This document shows, piece after piece, positions 25,989 to 33,208 of a stretch of 64,000 bases of DNA. Both the position numbers and the translations under genes were made by a program. This DNA is from Pavona decussata (lineage: Eukaryota): positions 4,216,001-4,280,000 of the forward strand of contig CDRNST010000035.1 in the NCBI GenBank assembly GCA_977016875.1. Direction: 5' to 3'. Positions within the stretch are counted from its first letter, which is position 1. Every line of letters starts with the position of its first letter. Below the pieces are notes generated by a model. That model worked only from the letters and a program-made list of their open reading frames with translations. It had not been told where the DNA came from and searched no databases.

Positions 25989-27581
25989 CTGTCATGCTGG
26001 GAGTAACCCCAAAATCTGTTGTGTTGAGAAGCTGTACAACAGGTGATGCCACATTGCTAAACGTTGTGCTGGGTGGGGGTGCTACAAGTGATGCTACATA
26101 TCTTGTGGTTGTAATGAGTGGTGGTATCCCACTGCCTGCAGTTGTGTTGGGTGGCTGTGATACAGGTGGCATCCCACTACCTGCAGTTGTGTTGGGTGGC
26201 TGTGATACAGGTGGCATCCTACTGCCTGCAGTTGTGCTGAGTGGCTGTGCTATAGGTTGCATCCCACTGCCTGCAGTTGTGCTGAGTGGCTGTGCTACAG
26301 GTGGCATCCCACTACCTGCAGTTGTGCTGAGTGGCTGTGATACAGGTGGCATCCCACTACCTGCAGTTGTACTGAGTGGCTGTGCTACAGGTGGCATCCC
26401 ACTACCTGCAGTTGTGCTGAGTGGCTGTGATACAGGTGGCATCCCACTACCTGCAGTTGTACTGAGTGGCTGTGCTACAGGTGGCATCCCACTACCTGCA
26501 GTTGTGCTGAGTGGCTGTGATACAGGTGGCATCCCACTACCTGCAGTTGTGCTGAGTGGCTGTGATACAGGTGGCATCCCACTACCTGCAGTTGTGCTGA
26601 GTGGCTGTGATACAGGTGGCATCCTACTGCCTGCAGTTGTGATGGATGGCTGTGATACAGGTGGTACCCCACTACCTGTGGTTGTGTTGGGTGGCTGTGC
26701 TACAGGTGGTACCCCACTGCCTGCAGTTGTGCTGAGTGGTGGTGCTACAGGTGGCATCCCACTGCCTGCAGTTGTGTTTGGTGGCTGTGCTACAGGTGGT
26801 ACCCCACTGACTGCAGTTGTGCTGAGTGGTGGTGCTAACGGTGGTACCCCACTTTCTGCAGTTGTGATGGATGGCTGTGCTACAGGAAGTACCCCACTGA
26901 CTGCAGTTGTGCTGAGTGGTGGTGCTAACGGTGGTACCCCACTTTCTGCAGTTGTGATGGACGGCTGTGCCACAGGTGGTACCCTACTACCTGCAGTTGT
27001 GCTGAGTGATGGTGCTACAGGTGGTACCCCACTGCCTGCAGTTGTGTTAGGTGGCTGTGCCACAGGTGGTACCCCACTGCCCACAGTTGTGATGGATGGC
27101 TGTGTTACAGGTGGAACCACGTTGCCTGCAGTTGTGTTGGGTGGCTGTGCCACAGGTGGTACCCCACTACCTGCAGTTGTGTTGGGTGGCAGTGCCACAG
27201 GTGGTACCCCACTACCTGCAGTTGTGCTGAGTGGTGGTGCTACAGGTGGTACCCCACTGCCTGCCGTTGTGTTGGGTGGCTGTGCCACAGGTGGTACCCT
27301 ACTACCTGCAGTTGTGCTGAGTGGTGGTGCTACAGGTGGTACCCCACTGCCTGCAGTTGTGTTAGGTGGCTGTGCCACAGGTGGTACCCCACTGCCTGCA
27401 GTTGTGTTGGGTGGCTGTGCCACAGGTGGTACCCCACTACCTGCGGTTGTGTTGGGTAGCTGTGCTACAGGTGGATCCACATTGCCTGCAGTTGTGCTGA
27501 GTGGCGGTGCTACAGGTGGTACCCCACTGCTTCGAGTTGCACTCTGCTCTCTGGGACGGGGTTCTCCAGAGTCTACAGCTT
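25989..27581 (-). CDS. G2 exon 2: 531-aa Pro/Thr/Ser/Ala-rich (mucin-like) linker made of 15-aa repeats
   Basis: ttttttaatccatgcag|AA GCT ... ATG ACA G|gtatga, 1593 nt, phase 1-1, no stops. The same acceptor context is found in the G4 exon at 59747. Confidence 0.75.
26110..27530. repeat. 45-bp coding minisatellite, about 31-32 copies (unit ~TTAGSGVPPVAQPPN / TTAGSGMPPVSQPLS)
   Basis: Directly visible: (ccactacctgcagttgtgctgagtggctgtgatacaggtggcatc)n with variants. Confidence 0.97.
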
Positions 27582-30894: not shown

Positions 30895-31651
30895 CTGCAA
30901 GAAATAAACTTGATAACCAAACTGGCTTTGGCTGAAAGGTTTGTGGATCAGAAGTCATCGTGTTTAGCTGCACTCCAACCAAACTCCATTTCCTTCTAGC
31001 TCTTCGTAGAATAGCACAGCCAAGAGGAACAAGAATGGACGATGTAAAATTGTCGAGTTGATACCGCTCAGAGGTATCTCGAGTTAGTTTGTGGGTTTTC
31101 ACACCAAACGATCGGTTGCTGCTTGGGTCTTCAGCCAGCATATGGCAGCAAAATCCTTCAGAGTAATCATAAACAAGGTCAACATGAAATGCGCCGTGCC
31201 TTAAAACGCTGCATTTTTTCTTAAACAAACCGTGGCGGAACTCGGAAGCATGTGAATTGAGCGGAATCACTGTTAGTCCTGGAGCAGCTGGATCTTGGAA
31301 GGGCCGGTCCTTTGCAACACGATCGAGCTCAAATGTTTTTAATTCTCTGTCTGATTTTTTAAAATCCAGGAAATAGTTCTTGAGATCGAAATCCCCTTGA
31401 AAGACGTCTTCAGCGGTTATGATCGCATACTTGAAGCTTCTGCCCCCTGCACGCCGCCACTGTGTTGGGATCTGGTCTTCTGTGAGTTTAAACAAAGTTC
31501 CACAACCAACAGTTTTTTCCCCTTGACGATCTCCTAAATCTGGAATACGTTTTTGAATCCGGCAAATTCCTCTTTCATTTTTTAATTCGTTTCTTCTGAC
31601 TTGCGCGGCTGTTGCTCCGCTAGCTGCACCTTGGATAACACGTTTGTCCAT
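30895..31651 (-). CDS. G2 exon 1: trypsin-like (PA clan / Trypsin_2-type) domain, probably catalytically dead
   Basis: First ATG (31651) after an in-frame TGA; donor CTT GCA G|gtaaat (phase 1), 757 nt. The order GICRI...VGCGTLF...YAIITAEDV...GLTVIPL...PLGCAILR...WSLVGV parallels VCRI..GTGFL..ITAxHV..DxAL..GSSGSPV..VVG. Fold assignment is by eye. Confidence 0.65.
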
Positions 31652-31850: not shown

Positions 31851-32446
31851 TAAATAAAAAAAATAAAAGAAAAGAATGTTGATACTGATAAATGTTGTGG
31901 TTTTTTTTTTTTAAAAATTTGAATTAATTTATATCTTATTGTCAGTCAAACAGCGAAAACGCTATGGAATGTTTCTTCTCGTTTTTCAACCAAATCAGTC
32001 TGAGTTTGCAGTGGAACTCCGTACATTAGTGGGGCACACCATCCGGCAAAACAATACGTTCACATTCATGAACATTTACGGGATAATCTGCAGATTAATG
32101 GGAAAAGTACCTTATCAGCTCAATGGCCTCCTGATGAGGTCTTGTTTGTTCGAACAGACAGATCGATACAAGTTATTAAAAAAATGTTATAAGATGTCCA
32201 AAGATTTCCCGGCGTAGGATTTGCGAACGTGTCATTTTCTTCCCTTCAAATTTGCACACAAGCGCACAAGCAAAGTTTTCCTTGCAAGAGGGGGACTTTT
32301 TCTGATCGCGCTTTCCGTCTTTTCGGTTTTGATATTCATTGCAGATTTTGGTTTTTCTCTTTTTTGAACATTCAGATTTTTTTGCCTGACAGAAAAACAG
32401 GTTTTTTTTAGTCAGTTTCTGGTTTTCCCCCAGTTGCCTCGGCGGC

Positions 32447-32580
32447 NNNNNNNNNNNNNNNNNNNNNNNNNNNNNNNNNNNNNNNNNNNNNNNNNNNNNN
32501 NNNNNNNNNNNNNNNNNNNNNNNNNNNNNNNNNNNNNNNNNNNNNNNNNNNNNNNNNNNNNNNNNNNNNNNNNNNNNNNN
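32447..32580. other. Assembly gap (N run); a second gap lies at 36632-36817
   Basis: N characters. Confidence 1.
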
Positions 32581-33208
32581 CGTATTTACATATTCTGATC
32601 AATAGCGCTTTACAATAATCAATACATCACCGTGAGAAAAAAGTAAACTAAGTCACAAACTATAAAAAATACTTCTTAAAAAGATAAGTTTTAAGTCGAG
32701 ATAAAAGTGATGTTGCTTGACAAAGCTCCACGGGTAGGCCATTCCAGAGTTTCGGAGCTGCTTCTGAAAATGATCTTACTCCCAATGTTGTAAGCTTCTT
32801 TCCCTTGGGATGGTCCAATAAGAGTTTACCAGTAAACCTAAGATTATATAATGAATTCGATTTTATACTAATAAGATCACTAAGATAAGTTGGCGTTAGG
32901 CCATAAACACATTTGAAAGTTCTTATAGTCAATACAAAGGAAACCGGCAGCCAGTGGAGCTCATAAAGCGCCGGTATAATGTGAGAAAACTTTCCGATGC
33001 CAAGAATAAGTCTGGCTGCTGCATTTTGTACACGCTGTAATTTAGCAATCTGCGCCTTTGGTAAGCCAAACAATAAACCATTGATTACAATAGTCAAGAC
33101 GGCTGGTTATAAAAGCATGGACCAAAGTAATTAAGGAGTCTCGCGACAGATATTTCTTAATAAGTCTCAAGTTATGTAAATGATAAAATGCCGCATTACA
33201 AGCCTTGT
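32581..33208 (-). mobile_element. L2/CR1-clade LINE 3' fragment
   Basis: LLFGLP..QIAKLQRVQNAAARLI...HI.PALYELHWLPV...RSFS.AAPKLWNGLP...LKTYLF. Confidence 0.85.

What the first reader, a model, noticed from the sequence alone, without database searches (positions are those of the whole stretch)
30895..31651. Trypsin-fold pseudoprotease at the N-terminus of a four-death-domain protein
Seen: the motif order of a PA-clan protease, but TAxH reads TAED, the DxAL region reads PGLTVI, and GxSG reads VPLG. All three triad residues appear absent. Inference: a protease-fold bait or peptide sensor on a long tether, analogous to plant NLR integrated decoys. With the GT4 result, this makes two different enzyme folds in one cluster that look inactivated.
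Basis: partly seen in the sequence, partly recalled or inferred. Interest (0 to 1): 0.75.

Follow-up and report, generated by a model that had tools for sequence, protein, structure and literature searches.

The report
Dead trypsin-fold head on coral death-domain protein
The first exon of a coral gene encodes a trypsin-shaped domain that has lost all three catalytic residues; it belongs to a previously undescribed family found in corals and sea anemones that sits, on a flexible linker, in front of death domains and other immune-type signalling modules, so it most likely binds rather than cuts.

Summary
The minus-strand exon 31651-30895 (252 codons plus one base, GT donor) has no Pfam or PDB sequence match. 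With a 76-sequence family alignment it folds confidently (pLDDT 89.8, pTM 0.87) into a chymotrypsin/trypsin double barrel. 115 PDB chains reach Z>=8, all PA-clan; the top hits include known dead proteases (Protein Z, MamO, SMIPP, HGF).

Profile-profile alignment to an active anthozoan Trypsin_2 family maps His to D82 and Ser to L210. The Asp position is G125 by motif.

The loss is family-wide. In 87 clusters (50% identity), the His column is mostly K or E, the Asp column is G, and the Ser column is variable. No other His or acidic residue is conserved.

Named members come from Nematostella, Stylophora, Pocillopora and Oculina. The domain is always N-terminal, followed by a low-complexity linker, then Death domains, TRADD-N/HEPN/ankyrin, ankyrin or OTU.

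Here splice phases link it to a 531-codon Pro/Thr repeat exon and four Death-like exons. Two pass Pfam's cut-off and two are sub-threshold. There is no transcript evidence.

The pseudoprotease reading is supported. The "bait/integrated decoy" mechanism is plausible but untested. I class it as a new variant of a known kind (PA-clan pseudoprotease). Another note in this scan had predicted the paralogous exon just beyond the window; I found it there.

The parts
30895..31651 (-). Exon 1: start codon plus the 252-residue trypsin-fold pseudoprotease head, ending in a phase-1 donor G|GTAAAT
   Evidence: ORF and sequence; AF2 models; PA-clan structural matches
31406..31408 (-). Codon of D82, the position equivalent to the catalytic His (family column mostly K/E, His in 3 of about 95)
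   Evidence: hhalign A4 vs A5 aligns I-T-A-E-D-V with L-T-A-A-H-V, E 6e-4; column counts
31277..31279 (-). Codon of G125, the motif-based equivalent of the catalytic Asp at the start of strand 126-131 (family column G in 81 of about 98)
   Evidence: Motif and strand register, column counts; the greedy hhalign puts the Asp at A123 instead, at low confidence
31022..31024 (-). Codon of L210, the position equivalent to the nucleophile Ser, followed by the invariant G211
   Evidence: hhalign aligns V-P-L-G-C-A-I-L with G-N-S-G-G-P-I-L and G-A-S-G-C-P-V-I; column counts
25989..27581 (-). Inferred exon 2 (1593 nt, phase 1-1): Pro/Thr/Ala/Gly-rich tether holding a 45-bp repeat of 31.4 copies at 26120-27530
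   Evidence: Acceptor cag|AAGCTG and donor ACAG|GTATGA in the right phase; TRF; translation
24779..25063 (-). Inferred exon 3 (285 nt, phase 1-1): Death-like domain 1, sub-threshold
   Evidence: bDLD3 20.5 bits, E 4.8e-4, below cut-off 27.1; splice sites
21787..22110 (-). Inferred exon 4 (324 nt, phase 1-1): Death-like domain 2, sub-threshold
   Evidence: Pfam Death 20.5 bits, cut-off 22.6; splice sites
20369..20674 (-). Inferred exon 5 (306 nt, phase 1-1): Death domain 3
   Evidence: Pfam Death 33.1 bits, E 6e-8; splice sites
18201..18505 (-). Inferred last coding exon: Death domain 4 and the stop codon; the acceptor (ccag|AA at 18506/18505) is the only phase-1 site in frame and is uncertain
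   Evidence: Pfam Death 36.1 bits, E 7e-9; sequence

Best explanation
Exon 1 encodes a catalytically dead PA-clan (Trypsin_2-like) double-barrel domain. It belongs to an old hexacorallian family in which the His-Asp-Ser triad was lost before the family diversified. The domain is always the N-terminal head of a modular intracellular signalling protein. In this gene the order is head, a tether of about 530 residues made of 15-residue Pro/Thr-rich repeats, then four Death-like domains.

The most likely mechanism is that the head works as a non-catalytic binding module. It keeps the barrel core and the backbone elements that frame the substrate cleft: the G-x-G strand, the invariant Gly after the former Ser, and the V-G-V strand. 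The loops around that cleft change quickly between paralogues. Binding of a protein or peptide ligand, of host or invader origin, would couple through the flexible tether to homotypic assembly of the Death domains into a signalling or cell-death complex.

Shown here: the fold, the loss of the triad, the breadth of the family, the N-terminal position and the architectures of relatives. Inferred: the splicing of this particular gene, binding through the old cleft, and the link to immunity.
For: Fold.

Triad loss at family level: across 102 aligned members the His column is K46/E16/H3, the Asp column is G81 and the Ser column is L32/Y10/H9/N9/D8/S1. The following Gly is present in all 90 members aligned at that column. 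In the 76-sequence alignment no His, Asp or Glu column reaches 50%, and the columns conserved at 60% or more are mostly Gly or hydrophobic.

Homology to an active family: hhalign E 6e-4 and 2.4e-3, with co-linear motifs including the shared G-V-C-R-I strand.

Persistence and constraint: there are 87 clusters at 50% identity. Named members come from Nematostella, Stylophora, Pocillopora and Oculina. This genome holds at least 10 uninterrupted copies. Among three recent paralogues, only 6 of 35 family-core columns vary against 92 of 204 other columns (Fisher p 0.0016), while overall dN/dS is 0.78-0.92.

Architecture: annotated relatives carry the head at residues 1 to about 250, then a low-complexity linker, then Death domains, TRADD-N + HEPN_DZIP3 + ankyrin, ankyrin alone, or OTU. 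A paralogous head exon lies upstream of a GT4-conflict exon both in this genome and in another coral assembly.

Gene model: all junctions are phase 1 with good splice signals.
Against: No ligand is known and no binding was tested. No transcript evidence was obtained for this gene, and the last acceptor is uncertain. Two of the four Death-like exons are below Pfam's threshold. The paralogue dN/dS near 1 rests on few synonymous differences (16-37) and could partly reflect relaxed constraint. I had no model coordinates, so the statement that no alternative catalytic constellation exists rests on conservation, not geometry. Two Cys (C30, C169) are conserved in about 90% of members and are unexplained. 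In the bacterial and metazoan systems described by Kaur et al. (PMC8195603), the domain joined to a Death-like adaptor is usually an effector rather than a sensor. The head could therefore be a disabled effector.
Confidence: 0.6

Rival explanations
1. Integrated bait. The dead protease mimics the coral's own active trypsin-like immune proteases. It traps invader-encoded protease inhibitors or effectors that target them, and capture triggers Death-domain signalling.
For: The genome holds at least 40 Trypsin_2 ORFs with an intact G-N-S-G-G-P motif in tandem arrays, which are possible guarded targets. Loops evolve fast between paralogues. The gene sits in a cluster of conflict-type GT4/Death genes.
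Against: The head family shows no HMMER-level similarity to those active arrays. It is uniformly inactive across 87 clusters and is shared by anemones and corals, so it is not a recent copy of a host target. There is no NLR or STAND chassis in the gene. Canonical protease inhibitors dock on an oxyanion hole and S1 pocket whose residues are changed here.
Confidence: 0.15
2. A cFLIP-like regulator. The dead protease, brought into a Death-domain assembly, pairs with or competes against an active protease partner and tunes its activation, as the pseudo-caspase FLIP(L) does for caspase-8 (PMC7586951).
For: It has the same logic of death-fold adaptor plus dead protease. Trypsin-like peptidases fused to Death-like adaptors are known activators in bacterial conflict systems (PMC8195603). 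An active anthozoan Trypsin_2 family shares the G-V-C-R-I strand motif.
Against: No member of the family itself keeps the triad, so there is no close active paralogue to pair with. The five active Trypsin_2 ORFs scanned, and the L018 ORF, show no Death domain.
Confidence: 0.12
3. A cryptic enzyme. The domain is still catalytic through non-canonical residues, for example the conserved Cys30 or Cys169.
For: C30 (68 of 76) and C169 (72 of 76) are the only strongly conserved reactive residues.
Against: Neither lies at the nucleophile position. No His or acidic partner is conserved. H170, next to C169, is His in only about a third of members.
Confidence: 0.05
4. A relic or spacer. The head has no function of its own and is carried along by exon duplication in a fast-turnover gene cluster.
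For: dN/dS is 0.78-0.92 between recent paralogues.
Against: All 10 copies in this genome have open frames. Core columns are protected (p 0.0016). The family is conserved between sea anemone and stony corals. dN/dS falls to 0.2-0.4 against the old paralogue L004.
Confidence: 0.08

Closest known systems
PA-clan pseudoproteases: Protein Z, haptoglobin, HGF beta-chain, scabies-mite SMIPP-S, MamO
   Same: They share the chymotrypsin-type double barrel with the catalytic triad replaced. They are among the best structural matches (Z 12.9-14.2). MamO is a documented repurposed serine protease (PMC4794232).
   Different: From my own knowledge, those are secreted, extracellular or magnetosome proteins that each arose within an active S1 subfamily. 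This family has no signal peptide-like N-terminus, is fused to Death and other intracellular modules, has no detectable Pfam match, and is inactive throughout.
Pfam Trypsin_2 (PF13365) peptidases, in particular the anthozoan family typified by the ORF at G000:C273 (locus L018; 'uncharacterized protein' in Montipora capricornis)
   Same: The motifs are co-linear: G-V-C-R-I strand, G-S-G strand, I-T-x-x-x-V, h-h-h-x-L strand, G-x-x-G-x-x-I-L and V-G-V. hhalign gives E 6e-4. Language-model and Atlas neighbours are mostly Trypsin_2.
   Different: The L018 family keeps His, Asp and Ser in stony corals and scores over the Pfam cut-off. The head family scores nothing and lacks all three residues.
cFLIP / FLIP(L), the pseudo-caspase with death-effector domains
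   Same: A death-fold adaptor domain or domains joined to a catalytically dead protease domain in a cell-death signalling protein (PMC7586951).
   Different: The protease fold differs (caspase versus trypsin) and the order is reversed: the dead protease is N-terminal here. There are Death rather than DED domains, a 530-residue repeat tether, and no active sister paralogue with the same architecture.
Trypsin-like peptidase + Death-like (bDLD) proteins of bacterial conflict systems, and the metazoan GT4/TRADD-N/Death expansions (Kaur et al. 2021, PMC8195603)
   Same: The combination of a trypsin-fold domain with Death-like adaptors; genomic company of GT4-conflict and Death genes; lineage-specific expansion in a sessile marine animal.
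   Different: The bacterial versions are described there as active peptidases. An inactive trypsin-fold head in anthozoan Death proteins is not mentioned in the passages I read.
Plant NLR integrated decoys
   Same: The idea of a non-functional copy of an enzyme or target fold attached to an immune signalling scaffold.
   Different: There is no NB-ARC/NACHT-LRR chassis here, no known effector, and the family is old and uniformly inactive. The resemblance is only conceptual.

Membership tests
PA clan (chymotrypsin/trypsin fold) superfamily | Two six-stranded beta-barrels with the cleft between them | tested here: met
   AF2 pLDDT 89.8. 115 PDB chains at Z>=8, all PA clan. Foldseek gave at least 500 hits. 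Atlas TM 0.57-0.65.
Active serine (or cysteine) peptidases of the PA clan | Catalytic His after strand 3 (T-A-A-H motif) | tested here: not met
   D82 aligns with the His. The family column is K46/E16/H3.
Active serine (or cysteine) peptidases of the PA clan | Catalytic Asp at the start of strand 6 (D-h-A-L-h motif) | tested here: not met
   G125 by motif (G in 81 members) or A123 by low-confidence hhalign. No acidic column is conserved.
Active serine (or cysteine) peptidases of the PA clan | Nucleophile Ser/Cys in G-x-S-G | tested here: not met
   L210 aligns with the Ser. The column is variable, with Ser once and Cys twice.
Pfam Trypsin (PF00089) / Trypsin_2 (PF13365) | Score over the family's gathering threshold | tested here: not met
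   No hit at E<=1 for the exon and none at E<=10 for 18 members. Only profile-profile similarity, E 6e-4.
PA-clan pseudoproteases (a functional class, not one lineage) | PA fold kept, triad lost, sequence under constraint | tested here: met
   Fold. Triad. Core columns protected, p 0.0016, and open frames in 10 copies.
Death-domain proteins (Pfam PF00531 / death-fold) | Death domain over the Pfam threshold in the same gene | tested here: met
   Two downstream exons score 36.1 and 33.1 bits, and two more score 20.5 bits, below cut-off. That they belong to one transcript with exon 1 is inferred from splice phase and from relatives with head + Death.
NLR integrated decoys | STAND NTPase (NB-ARC/NACHT) plus repeat sensor chassis carrying the decoy | tested here: not met
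   Pfam scans of the exons and of 10 long relatives show Death, TRADD-N, HEPN_DZIP3, ankyrin and OTU, but no NACHT or NB-ARC.
NLR integrated decoys | The decoy mimics a host protein targeted by a pathogen effector | not testable with these tools
   No effector or target is known.
cFLIP-like pseudo-protease regulators | A close active paralogue with the same adaptor architecture to pair with | tested here: not met
   All 87 cluster representatives lack the triad. The active Trypsin_2 ORFs examined have no Death domain.

The most novel reading that the evidence does not exclude
Anthozoans carry a dedicated, diversifying family of intracellular dead-protease baits. Each bait is tethered to death domains or other effectors. 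The family would detect invader-encoded protease inhibitors or protease-targeting effectors and convert capture directly into death-domain signalling. This would be an animal counterpart of plant integrated decoys, built without an NLR chassis.
Probability: 0.15. Interest if true: 0.85.

Novelty: new variant of a known kind. Interest (0 to 1): 0.55.

Why it matters
Dead proteases of the trypsin fold are known mainly as secreted cofactors and ligands. An intracellular family fused to death domains, TRADD-N/HEPN, OTU or GT4 modules, shared by sea anemones and reef corals, would be a new building block of early-animal cell-death and immune signalling. It would also be a trypsin-fold parallel to the pseudo-caspase cFLIP.

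The family has no Pfam model, and its annotated members are called "uncharacterized". Defining it would improve annotation of coral immune gene clusters. It also gives a tractable entry point, because the conserved Nematostella orthologue (XP_048587364.1) can be studied in a laboratory model.

If the head proves to be a recognition module under diversifying selection, it would make directly testable the question of how corals sense invaders without large antibody-like repertoires.

Tried and rejected
- Pfam scan of the exon and of 18 relatives found nothing.
- Profile searches against PDB sequences with A1 and A4 found nothing at E<=10.
- hhalign against a low-diversity set of the coral's arrayed Trypsin_2 domains (A3) aligned only the Ser-motif segment, at E 0.14 and later 0.007. 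Forced global mode gave a meaningless alignment.
- I looked for an active paralogue inside the family. None exists among the 87 cluster representatives.
- I looked for Death domains in five arrayed active Trypsin_2 ORFs and found none within the fetched frames.
- A second cluster look-up for taxon names of 10 divergent members returned no names, so the taxonomic range beyond Hexacorallia is unknown.
- Three literature searches found no description of this family. The actiniarian immunome paper has nothing relevant.
- I could not obtain model coordinates, so no distance check for an alternative triad or for the C30-C169 pair was possible.
- Complex prediction was not used, because no specific partner is claimed.
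- The N run upstream of the exon (about 32434-32600) was left as it is.

Full report
**What is at the coordinates**

All named relatives I found are anthozoan.

On the minus strand an ATG at 31651 opens a frame that continues to a G|GTAAAT donor, with 30895 as the last exon base.

**Is it a trypsin fold?**

Sequence libraries say nothing. There is no Pfam family at E<=1 for the exon or at E<=10 for 18 relatives, and no PDB sequence match with family profiles.

Structure prediction is clear. With 18 relatives the model had pLDDT 72 and pTM 0.76. With a 76-sequence alignment of the wider family it had pLDDT 89.8 and pTM 0.87, with no segment under 50. The structural searches agree:

- Foldseek against the PDB returned at least 500 hits at E<=1e-3, all trypsin-like proteases.
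- The Foldseek-independent VIA-align search of 48,161 chains gave 114-115 chains at Z>=8 and few matches below that (127-128 chains at Z>=5), all PA clan. The top hits were Protein Z (Z 14.2), V8 protease (13.7), an IgA1 protease trypsin-like domain, uPA, MamO, UmbA4, SMIPP and HGF, with 170-187 aligned residues at 3.3-4.0 A.
- ESM-Atlas structural neighbours (TM 0.57-0.65 over 190-206 residues) and language-model neighbours (0.95-0.96) are almost all Trypsin_2 or Trypsin clusters. They include bacterial conflict-system architectures such as VMAP-C + Trypsin_2.

The fold claim is therefore confirmed.

**Are the triad residues really gone?**

I had no coordinates, so the mapping rests on profile alignments, strand register and family conservation.

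In the same genome I found an active relative: a 350-residue single-exon ORF on contig C273 (locus L018). It passes Pfam Trypsin_2 at 37.4 bits and carries T-A-A-H-V, R-D-I-A-L-V and G-A-S-G-C-P. It also shares the G-V-C-R-I first-strand motif with the head family. Its family is conserved in corals and an anemone.

- hhalign of the head-family profile (A4) against that family (A5) gives E 6e-4 and puts D82 opposite the His.
- Against L018 alone, or against the arrayed coral Trypsin_2 set, it gives E 2.4e-3 to 7e-3 and puts L210 opposite the Ser and G211 opposite the following Gly.
- A greedy extension is co-linear over 222 columns.
- The Asp is the least certain. By motif and strand register it is G125. 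The greedy alignment suggests A123 at low confidence. Neither is acidic.

**The loss is family-wide**

An exhaustive HMMER search found 87 cluster representatives at E<=1e-3 (53 at 1e-10), mostly single-exon ORFs of about 250 residues. Aligned to the family model, the triad columns read:

| Triad position | Residue here | Family column |
|---|---|---|
| His | D82 | K46, E16, N6, Q6, D5, H3 |
| Asp | G125 | G81 |
| Ser | L210 | L32, Y10, H9, N9, D8, R7, S1 |
| Gly after Ser | G211 | G in all 90 members aligned at that column |

In the 76-sequence alignment, most columns conserved at 60% or more are Gly or hydrophobic. The only strongly conserved polar or reactive residues are C30, C169, T79 and Y93. 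No His, Asp or Glu column reaches 50%.

A geometric check remains to be done.

**Family, architecture and gene model**

Named members are from Nematostella vectensis (XP_048587364.1, 957 aa), Stylophora pistillata, Pocillopora verrucosa and Oculina patagonica. All are annotated "uncharacterized" or "hypothetical".

In these annotated models the head is always at the N-terminus and is followed by a low-complexity linker. The linker is acidic and about 400 residues long in Nematostella, short and Thr/Ala/Val-rich in Pocillopora, and three 32-residue repeats in Oculina. Then come Death domains, or TRADD-N + HEPN_DZIP3 + ankyrin, or ankyrin, or OTU.

This genome has at least 10 copies, all open. 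One of them lies 951-1730 bases beyond the window's end, as another note of this scan had predicted. It is upstream of a short linker exon and a GT4-conflict exon. The same head-then-GT4 arrangement, next to a GT4 + Death gene, occurs in another coral assembly.

For the gene in hand, every junction I propose is phase 1 with a good splice signal:

| Exon | Coordinates (minus strand) | Content |
|---|---|---|
| 1 | 31651-30895 | Pseudoprotease head |
| 2 | 27581-25989 | 1593 nt; 31.4 copies of a 45-bp unit |
| 3 | 25063-24779 | Death-like 1 |
| 4 | 22110-21787 | Death-like 2 |
| 5 | 20674-20369 | Death 3 |
| 6 | 18505-18201 | Death 4 and stop |

The last acceptor is the only in-frame phase-1 site and is not strong. 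Pfam supports exons 5 and 6 as Death domains (33.1 and 36.1 bits). Exons 3 and 4 score 20.5 bits each, below threshold.

"Four death domains" is therefore a reasonable but unverified model.

**Selection**

Nei-Gojobori estimates between the three recent paralogues give dN/dS of 0.78-0.92, from 16-37 synonymous differences. Against the old paralogue L004, which is the Nematostella-type copy, the values are 0.21-0.39.

Replacements avoid the family core: 6 of 35 core columns vary against 92 of 204 others (odds ratio 0.25, p 0.0016). They cluster at residues about 35-46, 110-123, 190-208 and 217-221.

By the motif mapping, the second of these stretches precedes the former Asp and the third precedes the former Ser. 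In active PA proteases those segments shape the substrate subsites. That last step is inference from general knowledge of the fold.

**How it most likely works**

I commit to a non-catalytic binding head. The barrel and the backbone frame of the cleft are kept, the chemistry is gone, and the surrounding loops diversify. The head is joined by a flexible tether to homotypic assembly domains.

This fits the logic described for conflict systems in which Death-like adaptors bring variable domains to a core complex (PMC8195603). It also fits known dead proteases that act by binding, such as Protein Z, haptoglobin, HGF and MamO (PMC4794232).

I cannot decide between three readings:

- **Bait for inhibitors or effectors.** I give it about 0.15, because the family is old, uniformly inactive and not a copy of the arrayed active proteases.
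- **Sensor of some other ligand.**
- **cFLIP-like regulator (PMC7586951).** I give it about 0.12, because no active sister with a Death domain was found.

Cryptic catalysis (0.05) and a functionless relic (0.08) are less likely.

**Novelty**

PA-clan pseudoproteases are a known kind. This family has no Pfam model, no named member and, in three full-text searches and two papers read, no description. Its intracellular, Death-linked architecture is unusual. I rate it a new variant of a known kind, with interest 0.55.

Noticed in passing
G000 contigs C232 (about 826-1097 kb) and C145 (about 1426-1467 kb); loci L006-L016: At least 40 Trypsin_2 (PF13365) matches. Most lie in large single-exon ORFs of 400-900 residues arranged in tandem arrays, with intact T-N-K-H-V, K-D-L-A-L-L and G-N-S-G-G-P motifs. 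No other Pfam domain was seen in the five ORFs scanned. This looks like a lineage-specific expansion of active proteases.
   Followed up: partly
L018:274-1326:+ (G000:C273:4102173-4103225): A conserved anthozoan 350-residue Trypsin_2 protein that shares the G-V-C-R-I strand with the dead family. Stony-coral members keep His, Asp and Ser. The four most divergent members (including an Actinostola protein) have T, S or A in place of the His while keeping the Asp and the G-A-S-G-C-P motif. This may be a second, independent step towards inactivity.
   Followed up: partly
window 26120-27530 (-): The tether is 31.4 copies of a 45-bp unit, giving a 15-residue repeat rich in Pro, Thr, Ala and Gly. Many units contain an N-T-T sequon. 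The neighbouring genes encode GT4-conflict glycosyltransferase-like domains joined to Death domains. The paralogue upstream of the GT4 exon has only a short homologous linker at about 59.6-59.8 kb with no repeat array, so tether length varies greatly between paralogues.
   Followed up: partly
head residues C30 and C169 (window codons 31564-31562 and 31147-31145): These two cysteines are conserved in 68 and 72 of 76 family members. They are the only strongly conserved reactive residues. C30 corresponds to the invariant Cys of the G-V-C-R-I motif in the active L018 family. Their role (structural pair, metal site or other) is unexplained.
   Followed up: no
window 20916-21320 (-) and 22068-22736 (+): ORFs of 134 and 222 residues lie inside the proposed introns between the Death exons. 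By eye they look like fragments of a retroelement reverse transcriptase. They were not scanned.
   Followed up: no
P0097 (Stylophora XP_022807529.1), P0095 (Oculina KAL9970918.1), P0078: The same dead-protease head is joined to TRADD-N + HEPN_DZIP3 + ankyrin repeats, to three 32-residue repeats + an OTU deubiquitinase-like domain, and to ankyrin repeats alone. This shows that the head is shuffled among many signalling and effector contexts.
   Followed up: partly
L017 (ENA ERZ26692694 contig, 20.8 kb): Another coral assembly shows the same local order as this window: a GT4-conflict gene with a Death ORF, then a head exon, then another GT4-conflict ORF about 5.7 kb downstream.
   Followed up: partly
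window about 32434-32600: A run of N lies about 0.8 kb upstream of the start codon (seen as X in ORF translations).
   Followed up: no
L004:940-1761:- (G000:C35:3742073-3742894): A slow-evolving paralogue, 28% identical to the window head. It groups with the Nematostella 957-residue protein (same A-V-C-R-I-[KR]-E-K-L-P start). This suggests one old conserved lineage beside the fast-diversifying ones.
   Followed up: partly
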